Under the pieces are notes generated by a model. It was not told the DNA's origin. It saw only the letters and a program-made list of their open reading frames with translations, and made no database searches. A stretch of DNA of 55,810 nucleotides, filler included, from Platydemus manokwari (lineage: Eukaryota), in NCBI GenBank assembly GCA_037951405.1. It is 4 parts of 4 records of this genome, joined end to end, with 100 filler letters (N's around TTAATTAATTAA, not from the genome) between each part and the next. Parts side by side here need not be neighbours in the genome. Positions count along the whole stretch, not along the records: positions 40,716 to 55,810 come from JBBMOY011351426.1; 3 more parts are not named here. The stretch is one strand, 5' to 3'. How positions within the stretch are numbered: the first letter of the stretch is position 1; every line of letters starts with the position of its first letter. A program made the translations under genes and the position numbers. This document shows, one piece after another, positions 40,716 through 51,290 of the stretch.

Positions 40716-41444
40716 TTGTAAAAATAATAATAATAATAATAATAATAATATTTATAGACAATGTTCATTATCATAATTATTTATATTATTGTCAATATTA
40801 TTAGTCATAAAAACATAATTATTATAAATATACTTATTAATATTAATAATTATAATTGCTGCACACTGTGCTCATAATATAATTCCTAATATTAATTTTA
40901 TCGATTTCGTGTTCAAATTGTAAATCAAAAGTCGAATCTGTTTGTTGTTGAACATTTTATACAATTGAAATGCTATAGAGATTATATTGAATAAATTATT
41001 ATTATTATGATAATATATGCATATTTCATCATTTCTTTATGATAGATTTTTTAATTATTATGTAAAATATTATGAATTTATTATTATCATTATTATTATT
41101 AAATACAATTATTATTTTTCAAATGAATATAATTGTATGTATCGTTATTATTTGTTATTATTATTATCGATATTATTACTTGAATCAATTTTATAAGTAA
41201 TATAATAATAATTATTAATTTTAATAATAATGATAATCATGATATTTATTAATATCATTTATATCCATCAATATTATTATCTTTATTATTATTATATATT
41301 ACTATTATATTATCATCCAATTCTCGTCATTATATTCAATATTATCATAAGAATCATTTTCTTGTTTTTCCAAACTCATGAGAACATTCGATTTTTAATT
41401 TCCATGATTCTAATCAATAATCTACAATTTGAATTATTAATCAG

Positions 41445-44400
41445 ATAACAGCGGCTCATGGGGAAGTGGGGGATTGTTTTCATTGTTTGATCAAATAAAT
41501 CCCAACCTATCGATTGAATATTTGAAAGCCAGTGAAATGGAAAATCTCAAGCTAGGCGATTGTCATATGTTTCCATTGAAACCAAATATTCAAGTATATA
41601 TTTTGGAAATAATAATAATAGTAGATGTTCTAGTTATCAGGTTGTGTTAATGGTTGCTCAATCAAGAGATGATAATGGCCGTATATCACCAGTGAGAATG
41701 AACCATTTGGAAACATGTTTTATTACAATTCGAAAATATGCTATCGATAAAAATGGTTAGTTAATGAATATTTTGATAATTAGAATCATTATTATTATTA
41801 TCATTATTATTATTATTCATTATTATTTATTATTGTTATTTATTATTATTATTCATTATTATTATTGTTATTATATATTACTATTATTATCATTATTTAT
41901 TATTATTATTGTTATTGTTATTTATTATTATTATTATTCATTATTATAATTGTTATTCATTATTATTATACATTATTATTATTATTGTTAATATTATATG
42001 TTATTATTTTTATTATTATTATATTAATAATTATCAATTACTTAAGGTCATTACTATACATATGCATGTAACTTATCTCACTAACAATTCTTGTAAGACC
42101 TCCACTGGTATACCGATTTTCTTGGTCATTCTTACTCTTGATTATTTGTTTGGATCAATTCAATTATTCGCTGATTGGTAGATTTGAATCTATAGCTAAT
42201 TTTCCAAATAGCCGCACACATTTATTCTAATTCCAAATTGATTTCAAATCAGCATAACCCTTGCACACATATATTTTTACTTCACATGTAACTTCATCGT
42301 TCTCTTCTGATGAATAAATGAGCCCCATAAGTGCTTATTAATTTATATAAATAATTAATTTGTTTATGAATTAATAATAATTATTTTATTAATTAAATGA
42401 ATTAAATTTATTATTGTCATCATTATTTTCGATTACCCCTTTAAGGGGCCAGTGGTATTTAATAAAATATTAAACAAATTTCTTAAAACGCTGAGACATA
42501 GAATTGATATTTGACGTTTTCAGCTTCAATTCATTTGACACGACTGGGATATAAAACCCCTCAATTCAATTGGTATGGAATAGAAAAACTTATTGAAAAA
42601 CATTTTACCGAAAAGGGTGTGCCAACATTCATGTGAGTTTGATTTTATTAATTTCATTTGTTTTGTTATGTAAATATTTTATAGTTATTCTGATGAGATT
42701 TTATTTCGTTGTAAATTATTTATCTCTTGATACAATTTTCAATGTGCTTCATTGATATTTTGTTGAAGTTTATTTTGATTTTTTCTAGAAATTTCTCGGT
42801 TTTGTTGTTTTTATTTTTTCATTATATCATACGGAGGTTATAATCAGTTGCTAAGAGACCCGTGAAAATAGATGTTTAGATCGATTTTAGAATATTCATA
42901 TTGTTTTAAATTTCAATTCACAGAAAACTGTGAAAAATTGAAGCGGGGCTGGTGGATCAAACGAGTTCTGCTTGCAAGGGTCCGATTATTATTTTCATAA
43001 TATTCTGCATTATCGTAAAACTTATGTTATTTTAAATAAAATTAAACAAGAACAGAAACAAAAATAGCAATGCAAGTATGTAAACACACACACACACATA
43101 TATTGCCTCTTCAGAAAGTGGTGTATAAAATCGTCAGTCAGTTAATTTGAAACCGTTTAATTTAATGATGAACTCTAATGTAACTTTGTCGCTGTTTTAG
43201 TAAGTTATTGGATGATTGTAAATTAACAAGCTGCCATAAAATCAAATTGTTTTCCCATTTCGTTTTAATTGAATGAGGGTCTCCGATCAATTAAATGGGT
43301 CACGCTCGATATTGTTTTCCTTGAGGTCCCTATGTTGGACTACAATTATGACATAAACTGAGTGTTTGTCAAACAAGAATGTTCATTTTATTCTTATTAT
43401 ATAGTTTCTTGTCCTATATAAATGTCATCATTTATATATTATTGATTACTTCTATAATTTAAATAGAATTTACCAGCATAAAATAAGGATCGCAGCCTTT
43501 ATAAAATAGATTCACATCAAATTGAGATTTTATTTGAATTCAAACTACACATTTCAGGAATATTTCTGTTTACTTCATATACAAACTAGATGCAATTATT
43601 ATCGATATTATTTTTTGCAGCTATTATTTTCGTCGGGGATTAATGAGTTCCAATTCAAATGTCAGCAATAAGAGTAATTTGTGATTGATTGTCGACCTAT
43701 AATCTATTATCTATCTGTCCAGAATTATCCGACACTTATTGGAGATCTATATTGACCAATGTTGTCGTTTATTTCGACAAATCTGTCAGTAAGGACATTG
43801 TCCACCTCTTGACGAGGCACGTTTATGCATATCCTTTTATCGATAATTTCCTTGAAAAATGAAAGAATTCTTTGAATTATTAAATAATTTTTAATGCAGC
43901 ATTAATAATAAATGAAAAAAAATCAATATTTAATTCGCATAAACAAAAATCTGCACGACGCGGTTGAAAAGAACTGTCACGTCGACTTAAATCGATTTTC
44001 AATTTTTGGCCTTTTAAATTAGTTGACTGAGAACAGATAAAATATTTCGGTTCTGCAATGTGATTCTAAATTGATATTTATTATCAAAACGATTTTCTAG
44101 ATCAGGGCCTACTAACTCAAAGAGGTGTTCTAATAATAACGACAGTTTTATTTTTCAAAATTTCCTATAATTGTGGTCGCTATATCTGTAATTTAAAATT
44201 TCCGGACTTTTCATTGATATTGTTTATCTCGTTTGTAAGTGTTCGTGGAAAATATATTTCGAAATTCATTAATAATTCAGAAAAAAATATGCTCAAATTA
44301 CGGTATGGGTGCCAAATAACAATTTTTTGATCATCACAATTTAAGATTACCCTATGTAAAATCAATGACCTGTGTATCCATGGAAATCGTATATGATGTA

Positions 44401-45033
44401 TTAAGCAAGAATCAGAAGTAGTATAGAAATAAAATTTAAAAAATAATTTTTGGTTTGAAAAATGAGCTTACGTTGTCATCCATTATCACGGGACATTTTT
44501 GTGTAGTATTGGAATTACGTGCGGCTTAATTCCGCTCTACAAGAAGATCCCGATATAAAGTGGTTCAAATCATTTTCAAAATGATTTTCATCTGAGATAC
44601 TATCTATCCGAATATTCGTTATTATATAATAAATAACGATTAATTTTATTAAATCTCTTAATTGTTTTATAACGATTATGACAAAAGTTTCGCGAGAATG
44701 AGATAATAATCTAGATATCAACGTTATTGGACATGGTTTGAATCCCATTGAAATATTTAATTATTGAATCCATAATATTATTGATAATTTTATTATTAAT
44801 CATTATTTTAATAAATTACTTTAATATTTTTCTTAACCCATTTATATACTCTTGATGGTGAAGTGACAGATAATCCAATGAATGATACAATAACTCATAT
44901 CTTAATAAATGATAATGATCAGTTATCATTTAATAGAGAATCATTCCATCAAGCAATTTATTTGAAGCTAAGTTGGTTGAGAGAATGTATTCGAAAAAAT
45001 ATGATGGTTCCAGAAATAAATTTTATACTTTAA
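41445..45033 (+). CDS. CHD1L: CHD1L/ALC1 chromatin remodeller, 3' exons: macrodomain plus C-terminal BRCT (partial)
   Basis: Exons 41445-41593 (DNSGSWGSGGLF..KASEMENLKLGD), 41641-41755 (VVLMVAQSRD), 42524-42632 (ASIHLTRLGYKTPQFNWYGIEKLIEKHFTEKGVPTFI), 43621-43673 (YYFRRG), 43723-43828 and 44850-45033 (BRCT). The first four match the ALC1 macrodomain motifs DDSGxWGxGGLF, VAQxRD and SVHLPRIG..FNWYGTERLI..GIPTYIYYF. Confidence 0.9.
41780..42035. repeat. (ATT)n low-complexity tract
   Basis: Long imperfect ATT/TAT trinucleotide array inside a CHD1L intron. Confidence 0.9.
42065..42335 (-). mobile_element. Possible RTE-type LINE remnant in a CHD1L intron
   Basis: The minus strand gives DEVTCEVKIYVCKGYADLKSIWN*NKCVRLFGKLAI, reminiscent of the post-RT segment (..EI..RI.KA...F..L..IW.....L..K) of RTE LINEs. 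It is short and contains stops. Confidence 0.35.
43829..44849 (+). other. U12-type (minor spliceosome) AT-AC intron
   Basis: The 5' splice site is ATATCCTTTT at 43829, the branch site TTCTTAAC is at 44830-44837, and the terminal AC is at 44848-44849. The phase-2 join GC|T restores HVYA-LDGEV of the BRCT domain. Confidence 0.88.
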
Positions 45034-46112
45034 TAGTTGTTTTTATTTATGAATTTATTATGTTGATTTTTGTGCCTATGATATTTTATATCAAATTCTT
45101 GGTGAGATTGATTGATCCTATATACTCACTTATTTATCAAATTTTATTGTTGATTTCTAGATTTTTATTATAAAAAAATTGACGAGTTTTGTTCTACTTG
45201 AACTGTGATAAAATTATAAATGGGAAATGTGTTGATGTTGATTGATAAATCATTGTTTCATTGTGGTATAAAGCTTTATTGACTTTATCATATGATTTTT
45301 TTTGTTTTTATTTAATATCAATGGAAATCAAGCGATACAGTATAAATAATTATTTTCAAATAATTTTACACAAACTATATGAAAACATCAAACCCACGAT
45401 GAAGTGTAAAATTTCATTTTCTCAAACGTGTGCCATATAACCCTATCGATTCAAGTGTTGTGTAAGGAATTATATTGTGGTTCCGCAAGTTGTTCGTATA
45501 GAATGATTTTGAATACTTTGAGTATCAAACGGGAAATTTTTAAATTTTGTAATAAATCTTTGCTTCTTAACCATCACTATAAGGTTATTTAGTACATTGA
45601 AATCTTGTGAAATAATCTGGGTGTGTATAGTTCTACATTATAGCATGCGTGAACATGGATGATCATTTCTTCGACAAATAATGTAAAGGCCTGTATTATA
45701 CAATGATGATAGCATTAAATATTGAAGAATACCGAAATTCAGAAAAATTATTTAAATCTAATCTTTATTTTATTTATTTCTTTCAAGAAAACGACATTGT
45801 TACTGATTAACATCACATCTCAACTGTTATATCAAATACACCCGTAATCAATTGTATCGGAAAACGTTTTGTTTCCGTGCACATTGACATCTTTACTCAA
45901 CTCTGTAGCAATATCGGGTATTAAATAATTATTACAACAAAATGAAATTACTCCAATAATGATAATTATAAATCTAACATTAAAAAACAACAACTAATAA
46001 AACTCCATTAAAAATACTTGAATTAACAACCATTTAGTTAAAAATGAAGATATAAAATTGTAAATCATATTTAATAGTGAGTTTTAAATCACATTTCTCT
46101 ATTTAATTGGAG

Positions 46113-48513: not shown

Positions 48514-49746
48514 ATGTTCATATTATTCATGTTGGTTTTCTCGTGTCAAGCGGAAAACATTTTTGAAGGTCATCAATACAATGGAACCCATGTTCGTATT
48601 AATAATCGCACTTATTTGGTGGTGAATTGTGAATATAAAAACGATTCAAAAATCGATTCTGTAAATTTCACTGTTCCAGAAATTAATTATCGAAATATTT
48701 CCAACATTCAATCACTATTCCTCCATGAATCGGACAATAGATATGCTCGATACTCCTGTTCGAATAGCAATGTTACCTGTGATTGTTCGATAGACTGGAA
48801 AAGTGCTATTGGATATAAATGTAATTGTCCATATAAAACATCCGGCGTCAAGAAATATTTCAATGAAAGTAGCAGAAGATTTGTTAATAAATGTGAAACC
48901 TTCGAAACACTGTGCAACAAATGCCATCCCAGAAATACAGCGAAATGCTCAATCGCCAATAAGACTGAGGTTAGAATAGTGTTTTTACAATTTGCATTAT
49001 CGTCCATGAAATATTTAAAAACAAAACAAAACCATTAATAGTAATTTTCAACAACTAAAATTAGCCATACTTTTATACTCCAATAGGAATTTTAGGAATT
49101 TTTCTTTTATATTTAGCTTTCAAATCTAGGTTCGTTGTACTTGTATTACTGGTTATGATTCATCGACTATGTGCTATCAACTGTTCAATGCTTGCAACAA
49201 TCCACCTGAAGGCTCTTCGCTATCGGGCAATTCGGCATGTTTGATTCGTGACAAAAATGTGTGCATTCCATTTCTTGGTTATCAGAAATATCTTTGTCAA
49301 TGCTTTTATCCATCGAAAGAAAATGGAAATTTAGGATTTCCGAATTGTATGGGAAAAAAGGTAATTCATAACATGAGATTTAAAATTAAATAAAATGTTG
49401 AATTTCATTCATTTGTTTTAATAATAGCTTGTTGAAATTTTTTAAAAAAAAGTTGATTTAGATGGTAAGATGTGATTCAATTCTCTGTATAAATGGTGGT
49501 GTTTGTGACCCAACACCAGGTGAACGATGTATTTGTAAAAAGGGATTCTCAGGTCGTTATTGTGAAATAGTTCACTATCGATACACGGGATTGTGGGCTC
49601 TGTGGTCGTCTTGTTATCCGGATTGTGGTAATTTTGGGGTACGATCTTCTGAATCCGTATGTGATGGACCGAGTAGTATATTTTGCAGTGGTGTTATTCG
49701 GAAATGGGAGCGATGTGCAGCTATTAGTTGTGATTTAAAATTTCTG
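48514..49746 (+). CDS. Secreted or cell-surface cysteine-rich protein with EGF-like repeats and a thrombospondin type-1 repeat (3' end unresolved)
   Basis: Phase-0 exons 48514-48969, 49130-49360 and 49462-49746. Signal-peptide-like MFILFMLVFSCQA, several N-glycosylation sequons, EGF motifs (CNCP, CTCITGY, CINGGVCD..CICKKGFSGRYCE), then TSP1 WALWSSCYPDCG..GVRSSESVC. Confidence 0.85.
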
Positions 49747-49946
49747 GTGAGTACTAAAATTAATGGAGACATTTTAATTGAATATTTGTTACGCATTTTC
49801 GTTGATTTCTGTGTTGGACTTTTCCAAAATAGAATCGACATTTTCATTTTAAAATTTTTTTATTTTCAAAACAACAATTTATCTGATCCATTTTAATAAT
49901 AGCTCTCGTGGAAAGGTGACCTACCGTTTTGCAGATTTATTCATAT

Positions 49947-50487: not shown

Positions 50488-51290
50488 TTGGGTTGGTGCA
50501 TAAATTTTTGCGATTTTATTTGTTGCAAGGAACACACATAAACTTCTTGTTTTAACTGATTTGAGTTATATTCATTCAGCTGACTTACCTATTTAAATAA
50601 TTTTAAACTAACTTTCACTTTCATTACCCTCATTAAAATAGTGTCAGGTAGATAAAAATGAACATTTCCGCCATTTACTTCTTTTTTATTTTAATCAACA
50701 TTTAAACGCTGCGGAAACCAAGAATGATTGTTGCATTTATAGAGAAAAGGCAGCCATTGAAAAAACAGCACAAAAGTGGTTTTCGAAATTTAACAGTGTA
50801 CATTTTGATTTAAAAGATGTACCTAGGTCGACCTAGTGACTTTAATGAAGATTATTTGAACTAATAGATTCATGATGATCTACGTCAATAGACACGTGCG
50901 CTTGGACGAGCCATGGATTGTGATCACACCACTATTTCTCGACATCTCAAGAAAATGGGAAAAGTTCAAAAGCTTGGATCAAAGAAAGTCACAAAAATCA
51001 ACATGTTTCCATTTCTGCATCTTTACTCGTTCGCCATCAATCTGCTGTGCAACAACATCAATATTTTATTTCCAGGATCGTAACAGATGATGAGAAATGG
51101 AGCCTGTGTGTAAATTTGAAACAATAAAAGCTAGGGTAAGTCCTCAAAAGCAACCACAACCTCCATATTCGCTCGACTTAGCCCCAACAAATTTTCATCT
51201 TTCCTGCTTCATGTCGGACCATCTTTCTGGTCTCACTTTTGAAAACGAAGAACCAATAACAAAGTAGATTGACGAAATTTCGACCAAAAA
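50488..51290 (+). mobile_element. Decayed, internally deleted mariner transposon (cecropia/Hsmar1-like)
   Basis: TA followed by the TIR-like TTGGGTTGGTGCATAAATTTTTGCG. Transposase remnants: EHFRHLLLFYFN..NAAET, TAQKWFSKF, CDHTTISRHLKKMGKVQKLG, SRIVTDDEKW and PPYSLDLAPTNFHL (the YSPDLAP motif). The right TIR was not found. Confidence 0.88.

What the first reader, a model, noticed from the sequence alone, without database searches (positions are those of the whole stretch)
43829..44849. U12-type AT-AC minor-spliceosome intron hidden in CHD1L
Seen in sequence: ATATCCTTTT directly follows ..CAC GTT TAT GC, and 1021 nt later TTCTTAAC-CCATTTATAT-AC precedes an open frame that reads as the second half of a BRCT domain. 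The phase and amino-acid continuity are exact (HVYA|LDGEV). Established knowledge: this matches the U12 5' splice site RTATCCTT and the branch site TYCTTAAC lying 10-20 nt from the AC. Inference: the organism has a working minor spliceosome (U11/U12/U4atac/U6atac), and GT-AG-only gene finders will truncate this protein at AYPF.
Basis: partly seen in the sequence, partly recalled or inferred. Interest (0 to 1): 0.75.

Follow-up and report, generated by a model that had tools for sequence, protein, structure and literature searches.

The report
Likely minor-spliceosome AT-AC intron in CHD1L
A 1021-base intron with textbook signals of the rare "minor" (U12-type) splicing machinery splits the last protein domain of a CHD1L-like DNA-repair gene in an AT-rich animal-like genome. 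It is well supported by sequence but unconfirmed by RNA, and it is an ordinary kind of feature for most animals.

Summary
ATATCCTTTT starts at 43829, straight after ...CAC GTT TAT GC. TTCTTAAC lies at 44830-44837, ten bases before the terminal AC (44848-49). The frame resumes at 44850 (HVYA|LDGEV).

The gene is a CHD1L-type macro-domain gene: exon 3 matches human CHD1L at E=8e-9. The last exon is the second half of a BRCT domain (TopBP1 BRCT E=2e-5; sub-threshold Pfam BRCT matches to profile positions 31-78).

Three points favour a real U12-type AT-AC intron:
- The 5' motif occurs only once in the window, at this exon edge.
- The chance expectation of an in-frame donor plus branch-site/AC pair here is about 7e-5.
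- BRCT homology begins 3-8 bases after 44850, yet no AG lies between 44715 and 44862, so no GT-AG intron can deliver that sequence.

Not shown: the splicing itself (no RNA run exists), minor snRNAs (only 15 kb is available, and it holds none), and conservation in relatives (none found). The organism is unidentified.

Minor introns occur in nearly all animal groups, so this is a new member of a known kind. Confidence is about 0.85; interest is low to moderate. The BRCT appended to CHD1L is a side observation worth a look.

The parts
41445..41593 (+). Exon 1 of the piece: CHD1L-type macro domain, middle part (..NSGSWGSGGLF..). Enters in phase 1 after a CAG acceptor; the upstream exons lie beyond the piece's edge.
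   Evidence: sequence; matches human CHD1L residues 729-771 / 743-785 (E=0.056, weak on its own but collinear with exon 3).
41594..41640 (+). 47-nt GT-AG intron (GTATAT...TATCAG), phase 0
   Evidence: inferred from frame continuity and CHD1L collinearity.
41641..41755 (+). Exon 2: macro domain (VVLMVAQSRDDNGR...AIDKN)
   Evidence: No independent PDB hit. It lies collinearly between the exon 1 and exon 3 matches to CHD1L.
41756..42523 (+). 768-nt GT-AG intron (GTTAGT...TTTTCAG), phase 1, with a long (ATT)n-like low-complexity run
42524..42632 (+). Exon 3: end of the CHD1L macro domain (SIHLTRLGYKTPQFNWYGIEKLIEKHFTEKGVPTF)
   Evidence: human CHD1L residues 823-857 / 837-871, E=8.4e-9
42633..43620 (+). 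988-nt GT-AG intron (GTGAGT...TTTGCAG), phase 2
   Evidence: The split codon AT|C gives Ile, so the junction reads F-I-YYF. From my memory of the human protein, not checked here with a tool, that matches its IYYF.
43621..43673 (+). Exon 4: (I)YYFRRGLMSSNSNVSNK, linker after the macro domain
43674..43722 (+). 49-nt GT-AG intron (GTAATT...TGTCCAG), phase 1. If retained, the frame stops at TGA 43682-43684, giving a CHD1L without a BRCT.
   Evidence: inferred from matching phases. Exon 5 has no ATG of its own.
43723..43828 (+). Exon 5: proposed first half of the BRCT domain (..SILTNVVVYFDKSVSKDIVHLLTRHVYA)
   Evidence: No family or PDB hit on its own. Its length (about 30 residues before the junction) equals the missing profile positions 1-30.
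43829..43837 (+). U12-type 5' splice site ATATCCTTT
   Evidence: the only RTATCCTY in the window, both strands
43829..44849 (+). Proposed U12-type AT-AC intron, 1021 nt, phase 2
44830..44837 (+). U12-type branch-site motif TTCTTAAC. The candidate branch adenosines at 44835/44836 lie 13-14 nt before the last intron base. No polypyrimidine tract follows and no AG is nearby.
   Evidence: The same TTCTTAAC branch region is listed for a rice U12-type intron in PMC7367187.
44850..45035 (+). Exon 6: second half of the BRCT domain (LDGEVTDNPMNDTITHILI...SWLRECIRKNMMVPEINFIL), stop TAA at 45033-45035
   Evidence: LIG3_BRCT profile positions 31-77 of 78 (E=1.1e-4), BRCT 33-78 of 78, BRCT_2 31-82 of 86, all below the curated cut-offs. 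TopBP1 BRCT 8ok2 E=2e-5, 1wf6 E=1e-4; nearest Atlas clusters are BRCT.

Best explanation
Positions 43829-44849 are a genuine U12-type (minor-spliceosome) AT-AC intron, phase 2. It is the last intron of a CHD1L-like gene whose macro domain is followed by a C-terminal BRCT domain. Shown: the motifs, their positions, the frame, the domain halves, and the absence of any AG acceptor that could serve instead. Inferred from the established mechanism: U11 and later U6atac pair with ATATCCTTT at the 5' end. U12 pairs with TTCTTAAC and bulges a branch adenosine 13-14 nt before the terminal AC. Splicing then joins 43828 to 44850, fusing beta1/alpha1 of the BRCT (exon 5) to its G-turn/beta2 through alpha3 (exon 6). 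If the intron stays in, the frame runs on as AYPFIDNFLEK and stops at 43860, giving a protein with half a BRCT.
For: 1. The 5' splice site ATATCCTTT matches the U12 AT-AC consensus at every position and is the only RTATCCTY in the window.
2. TTCTTAAC lies 10 nt before the terminal AC. This is a branch motif and spacing of the kind seen in curated U12 introns (PMC7367187; PMC1557818).
3. The expected number of chance in-frame donor plus branch/AC pairs in these zones is 7e-5, or 4e-6 with the exact motifs.
4. Exon 6 aligns to BRCT profiles from position 31-33 to the end, starting at its residue 2-3, and to the TopBP1 BRCT from its residue 3. Coding sequence therefore reaches to within 3-8 nt of 44850.
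5. No AG lies between 44715 and 44862, and the exon 6 frame opens only at 44815. No GT-AG or GC-AG intron can deliver the DGEV motif.
6. Exon 5 supplies about 30 residues before the junction, the number of profile positions missing from exon 6. It has a beta-strand/helix pattern (VVVYF, then SKDIVHLLTRHVYA; by eye).
7. The other four introns of the gene are ordinary GT-AG introns with matching phases, so this one stands out as a separate class.
8. Phase 2 fits the known bias of minor introns away from phase 0 (PMC10639083).
Against: No transcript evidence exists. The only public run holding this DNA is a DNA run, stored as contigs. No minor snRNA could be looked for beyond 15 kb, and none is in the piece. 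No relative of exon 6 turned up in 1.84 billion representative proteins or in JGI metagenomes, so conservation of the intron is untested. Exon 5 has no significant family hit of its own. The branch motif differs from TCCTTAAC at one position (T for C, which would leave a G-U pair with U12). The organism is unidentified, and some animal lineages (nematodes, myxozoans, oikopleurids, tardigrades) have lost minor splicing. The 47-49-nt introns and the one exact TTTTCAG acceptor are nematode-like. The link of the BRCT exons to CHD1L rests on an inferred 49-nt intron.
Confidence: 0.85

Rival explanations
1. The exons are joined by an ordinary U2-type GT-AG intron, from donor 43789 (TCA|GTAAGG) to acceptor 44869 (GTGACAG|A) or 44863. 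The U12-like motifs are coincidental.
For:: these pairs keep the frame open, and the donor GTAAGG is a good U2 5' splice site.
Against: The join would delete 21-23 residues (SKDIVHLLTRHVYALDGEVT..), that is helix alpha1 and the G-turn/beta2 that match the BRCT profiles and TopBP1. The acceptors have no pyrimidine tract, unlike the four real acceptors of this gene. The coincidence of the two U12 motifs has an expectation of about 1e-5 to 1e-4.
Confidence: 0.04
2. CHD1L ends at the TGA at 43682-43684 with the 49-nt 'intron' retained, as in vertebrate CHD1L, which has no BRCT. The BRCT exons are then an unexpressed relic, or part of a separate or alternative transcript. The U12 intron may be a fossil that is no longer spliced.
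For: Reading through 43674 gives a stop after 3 codons. From memory, human CHD1L ends about 25 residues after the equivalent IYYF. No CHD1L-plus-BRCT architecture turned up in the one literature search made for the two names together, which returned only general reviews. Exon 6 has no relatives in the large protein libraries.
Against: Exons 5 and 6 keep open frames with the conserved BRCT residues (G-turn, THILI strand, W in SWLRECI). Exon 5 has no ATG and opens just after a good CAG acceptor whose phase (1) matches the GTAATT donor of exon 4. The 49-nt size matches the gene's other short intron of 47 nt. Intact U12 signals on both sides argue for continued use.
Confidence: 0.08
3. Pure chance: an AT-rich sequence happens to contain both motifs, and the BRCT-like ORF is spurious.
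For: Each 8-mer alone is expected about once per window. TTCTTAAC occurs three times in the window.
Against: The joint in-frame expectation is 7e-5 or less. Exon 6 has an independent match to solved TopBP1 BRCT structures at E=2e-5.
Confidence: 0.03

Closest known systems
U12-type (minor-spliceosome) AT-AC introns, e.g. the human/dog SMYD2 intron |ATATCCTTTA...TTTCCTTGAC...AC| and the rice U12 intron with branch region TTTTTCTTAACT, both listed in the intronIC/IAOD paper (PMC7367187)
   Same: The 5' splice site ATATCCTTT is identical. [quoted passage not shown] The termini are AT-AC, there is no polypyrimidine tract, and the phase is not 0.
   Different: Splicing is not observed here. The branch motif has T instead of C at its second position. 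The host gene and domain (a BRCT appended to CHD1L) are not a known minor-intron position as far as I could check. The organism is unknown.
U2-type AT-AC introns ('AT-AC II', e.g. SCN4A/SCN5A; PMC1557818)
   Same: AT-AC termini.
   Different: Those have a U2-like 5' splice site (AT followed by a U2 consensus) and a pyrimidine tract. This one has the U12 consensus ATATCCTT and a U12 branch motif, and no tract.
CHD1L / ALC1 (PDB 7otq, 7epu, 7enn)
   Same: The C-terminal macro-domain sequence is clearly related (exon 3 E=8e-9, exon 1 collinear).
   Different: The human protein in those entries ends shortly after the macro domain (chain length 872-897, match up to residue 871). Here the gene model continues into a BRCT domain. 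The Snf2 ATPase part lies outside the available piece.
TopBP1 BRCT domain (PDB 8ok2_E, 1wf6_A)
   Same: Exon 6 aligns over 56 residues from the G-turn to the C-terminal helix, with the conserved Trp (E=2e-5 and 1e-4).
   Different: This is a single BRCT at the end of a remodeller-type gene, not a multi-BRCT scaffold. Similarity is modest and the first half is not detectable on its own.

Membership tests
U12-type (minor) intron, AT-AC subtype | 5' splice site /RTATCCTT at intron positions +1 to +8 | tested here: met
   ATATCCTTT at 43829-43837; the only such site in the window
U12-type (minor) intron, AT-AC subtype | Branch-site motif of the TCCTTRAY class close to the 3' end (roughly 10-20 nt before it), with no need for a polypyrimidine tract | tested here: met
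   TTCTTAAC at 44830-44837, with branch A 13-14 nt before the last base. It matches 7 of 8 positions of TCCTTAAC, and the mismatch is compatible with a G-U pair.
U12-type (minor) intron, AT-AC subtype | Terminal dinucleotides AT...AC (or GT...AG) that keep the reading frame | tested here: met
   AT at 43829-30 and AC at 44848-49. Phase 2 gives an open frame of 95 codons from 43725 to the stop.
U12-type (minor) intron, AT-AC subtype | The junction is actually used in RNA | not testable with these tools
   No RNA run holds this locus. The only holder, X1, is DNA contigs.
U12-type (minor) intron, AT-AC subtype | The genome encodes U11, U12, U4atac and U6atac snRNAs and the minor-specific proteins | not testable with these tools
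   Only 15,095 bases of the genome are available. Rfam finds no snRNA in them, which says nothing about the rest.
U12-type (minor) intron, AT-AC subtype | Intron position or type conserved in orthologues | tested here: inconclusive
   No relatives of exon 6 in 1.84 billion representatives or in JGI metagenomes
CHD1L / ALC1 | C-terminal macro domain of the CHD1L type | tested here: met
   Exon 3 against human CHD1L E=8.4e-9; exon 1 E=0.056, collinear; exon 2 has no hit of its own
CHD1L / ALC1 | N-terminal Snf2-type ATPase | not testable with these tools
   It would lie upstream of 40716, beyond the piece's edge.
BRCT domain | Full-length match to a BRCT profile above the curated threshold | tested here: inconclusive
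Exon 6 alone matches positions 31-78 with 18-23 bits, against cut-offs of 21-27. Exon 5 alone gives nothing.
BRCT domain | Conserved G-turn after helix alpha1 and conserved Trp in helix alpha3 | tested here: met
   LDGEV and SWLRECI align to GGGV and KWLLECF of TopBP1

The most novel reading that the evidence does not exclude
The unidentified AT-rich host may belong to an animal lineage thought to have lost or nearly lost minor splicing. The gene's 47- and 49-nt introns and its TTTTCAG-type acceptor are nematode-like, and nematodes, tardigrades, myxozoans and oikopleurids are reported as losses. An intact consensus AT-AC intron in an open BRCT frame would then point to a retained minor spliceosome in that lineage.
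Probability: 0.05. Interest if true: 0.7.

Novelty: new member of a known kind. Interest (0 to 1): 0.3.

Why it matters
If real, the intron is a marker that this organism keeps a working minor spliceosome. It is also a concrete case where GT-AG-only annotation would lose or garble the last domain of a DNA-repair chromatin remodeller. For most animals that is expected, not surprising. It would matter more if the host lies in a lineage reported to have lost minor splicing. The by-product is the more unusual item biologically: a CHD1L whose macro domain (a poly-ADP-ribose reader) is followed by a BRCT domain. That would give the remodeller a second damage-signalling module, but it rests on an inferred 49-nt intron and needs transcripts.

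Tried and rejected
- RNA evidence: the look-up of sequencing runs gave one DNA holder only. Laying it showed an identical DNA contig, and one joint (43619 to 44772) with only 21 letters on the shorter side, under the tool's own 30-letter caution.
- Relatives of exon 6: there were no hits in 1.84 billion representative proteins or in JGI metagenomes.
- Organism identity through the neighbouring gene: the 174-aa and 144-aa ORFs are not on record. The 174-aa ORF has no homologues and no Pfam family.
- Rfam on the piece gave only two chance-level matches and no snRNA.
- Exon 5 alone gave nothing against Pfam or the PDB.
- Protein Atlas look-ups only confirmed BRCT-like and macro-like features.
- Known minor introns in CHD1L or TOPBP1: the literature search found nothing, and no supplements are held for the two papers tried.
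- All 52 frame-keeping GT-AG, GC-AG and AT-AC junctions were listed. I rejected all but the proposed one because they delete or add residues inside the BRCT core.
- The AC acceptors at 44819 and 44837 are also in frame with donor 43829. The first lies upstream of the branch motif and the second lies inside it, so I rejected both.
Full report
**The observation**

Exon sequence ...ACG AGG CAC GTT TAT GC is followed at 43829 by ATATCCTTTTATCG. At the other end, TTCTTAAC (44830-44837) is followed by CCATTTATAT and then AC (44848-49), and the exon resumes at 44850 with T CTT GAT GGT GAA GTG. The interval is 1021 nt. The split codon GC|T is Ala (phase 2), and the junction reads HVYA|LDGEV.

**The gene**

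I worked out the + strand model from the sequence and checked splice-site contexts and frames by script.

| Feature | Coordinates | Notes |
|---|---|---|
| Exon 1 | 41445-41593 | macro domain |
| Intron | 41594-41640 | 47 nt, GTATAT..CAG |
| Exon 2 | 41641-41755 | macro domain |
| Intron | 41756-42523 | 768 nt, GTTAGT..TTTTCAG |
| Exon 3 | 42524-42632 | end of macro domain |
| Intron | 42633-43620 | 988 nt, GTGAGT..TTTGCAG |
| Exon 4 | 43621-43673 | linker |
| Intron | 43674-43722 | 49 nt, GTAATT..TGTCCAG |
| Exon 5 | 43723-43828 | proposed BRCT first half |
| Candidate intron | 43829-44849 | 1021 nt, AT-AC |
| Exon 6 | 44850-45035 | BRCT second half, TAA stop |

All phases match across the introns.

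Exon 3 matches the end of the macro domain of human CHD1L at E=8.4e-9 (residues 823-857 of 7otq_K). Exon 1 matches residues 729-771 of the same chain weakly but collinearly (E=0.056). Exon 2 has no hit of its own but lies between them.

The Snf2 ATPase would lie upstream of the piece's edge.

Exon 6 (60 aa) matches several BRCT profiles, all below the curated cut-offs:
- LIG3_BRCT, profile positions 31-77 of 78 (E=1.1e-4)
- BRCT, positions 33-78 of 78 (E=3.4e-3)
- BRCT_2, positions 31-82 of 86

It also matches solved TopBP1 BRCT structures (8ok2_E E=2e-5, 1wf6_A E=1e-4). Its nearest Atlas clusters are BRCT. The alignments start at residue 2-3 of exon 6, with LDGEV on the G-turn, and include the conserved Trp (SWLRECI).

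Exon 5 (34 full codons) has no hit of its own. It does supply about 30 residues before the junction, the number of profile positions missing from exon 6. By eye it shows a strand-then-helix pattern (VVVYF, then SKDIVHLLTRHVYA).

**Is it more than chance?**

- Each 8-mer alone is expected about once per window, so a single motif proves nothing.
- ATATCCTT, and the looser RTATCCTY, occur once in the whole window on both strands, at this exon edge.
- I took a first-order Markov model of the piece. I counted U12-type donors in the 123-nt zone where exon 5's frame is open. I paired them with branch-site-like motifs 9-16 nt before an AC in the zone where exon 6's frame is open, and required the frame to be kept. 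The expected number of such pairs is 7e-5 with degenerate motifs and 4e-6 with the exact ones.

**Can a GT-AG intron do the job?**

I listed all 52 GT-AG, GC-AG and AT-AC pairs that keep the frame open. No AG lies between 44715 and 44862, and exon 6's frame opens only at 44815. BRCT homology nevertheless starts 3-8 nt after 44850. No AG acceptor can therefore include the DGEV turn.

The only respectable U2-type alternative runs from donor 43789 (TCA|GTAAGG) to acceptor 44863 or 44869. It would delete 21-23 residues, namely helix alpha1 and the G-turn/beta2. Its acceptors also lack the pyrimidine tract seen at the gene's four real acceptors.

Among AC acceptors in frame with donor 43829, 44819 lies upstream of the branch motif and 44837 lies inside it. 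Only 44849 sits at the usual distance, with branch A 13-14 nt before the end.

**Comparison with what is known**

The 5' site equals the AT-AC U12 consensus. For example, the SMYD2 introns are listed as |ATATCCTTTA...TTTCCTTGAC...AC|, and a rice U12 intron has the branch region TTTTTCTTAACT (intronIC paper PMC7367187). U12-type 5' sites and branch sites are highly conserved, lie close to the 3' end and lack a pyrimidine tract (PMC1557818). U2-type AT-AC introns instead have a U2-like 5' site, which this one does not.

The pairing of the 5' site with U11/U6atac, and of the branch site with U12, is established knowledge that I apply here by inference.

**What could not be shown**

- No RNA run holds the locus. 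The one holder, X1, is a DNA run kept as contigs. Its 4186-nt contig matches 42038-45300 without a difference, apart from a repeat stretch (43021-43110) that the tool skipped. Its one 'joint' has only 21 letters on the shorter side, under the tool's own 30-letter caution.
- Rfam finds no snRNA in the 15 kb, which says nothing about the rest of the genome.
- Exon 6 has no relatives in 1.84 billion representative proteins or in JGI metagenomes. The neighbouring ORFs are not on record and have no homologues. I could therefore test neither conservation of the intron nor the identity of the organism.
- In one search the exons were joined inside a script only to test for stop codons.

**The host**

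The piece has 27.5% G+C. Three things suggest an animal:
- a CHD1L gene
- a cysteine-rich secreted-protein gene with sub-threshold EGF matches
- a decayed mariner transposase related to SETMAR/Hsmar1 (E=2e-4)

Minor introns are present in nearly all animal groups. Complete losses are reported for nematodes, myxozoans, oikopleurids and tardigrades, and extreme reduction for Diptera, bdelloid rotifers, springtails and mites (PMC10639083; also PMC2846911). The 47- and 49-nt introns and the TTTTCAG-type acceptor are reminiscent of nematodes, so a small chance remains that the host is in a 'loss' lineage. That would raise the interest.

**Verdict**

The interpretation as a U12-type AT-AC intron is very likely right (about 0.85) on sequence grounds, but it is not observed in RNA. 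The inference of a working minor spliceosome is reasonable but untested. As a kind of feature it is known, so this is a new member of a known kind and the interest is low to moderate (0.3).

The side observation may deserve more attention than the intron: this CHD1L appears to carry a C-terminal BRCT domain, joined through an inferred 49-nt intron whose retention would instead end the protein at 43684, as in vertebrate CHD1L.

Noticed in passing
window 41445-45035 (+): The gene model puts a BRCT domain after the CHD1L macro domain. The solved human CHD1L chains end just after the macro domain (match up to residue 871 of 897). The one literature search made for CHD1L, BRCT and macro domain together returned only general reviews. 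The link depends on an inferred 49-nt intron.
   Followed up: partly
window 43674-43722 and 43682-43684: If the 49-nt intron is retained, the frame stops after three codons (..NKSNL, TGA at 43682-84). That gives a CHD1L of the usual vertebrate-like length, so short and BRCT-bearing isoforms are both conceivable.
   Followed up: no
window 50872-51267 (+): Decayed mariner-type transposase, split over shifted frames. The piece 51148-51252 matches the SETMAR/Hsmar1 transposase domain (E=2e-4) and Mos1 weakly. Pfam gave nothing on the fragments.
   Followed up: partly
window 48514-49896 (+): Probable secreted cysteine-rich protein gene. It has an ATG plus a signal-peptide-like start, many N-x-S/T sites, sub-threshold EGF matches and a W..W..C..C pattern reminiscent of a thrombospondin type 1 repeat (by eye only). 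It has no homologues in the big protein search.
   Followed up: partly
window 41764-42030 and 40716-41330: Long (ATT)n-like low-complexity runs inside introns, with G+C down to 15%. The reads tool skipped 41774-42037 as a repeat.
   Followed up: no
window 41594-41640 and 43674-43722: The gene has two very short introns (47 and 49 nt) beside three of about 0.8-1 kb. The bimodal intron sizes and the TTTTCAG-type acceptor may help to place the unidentified host.
   Followed up: no
window 43823-43886 (-) and 45673-45741 (+): Chance-level Rfam matches: a Streptococcus sRNA SpR14 (E=0.12), overlapping the 5' splice site on the opposite strand, and SNORD45 (E=0.96). Both are far below their gathering scores.
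   Followed up: no
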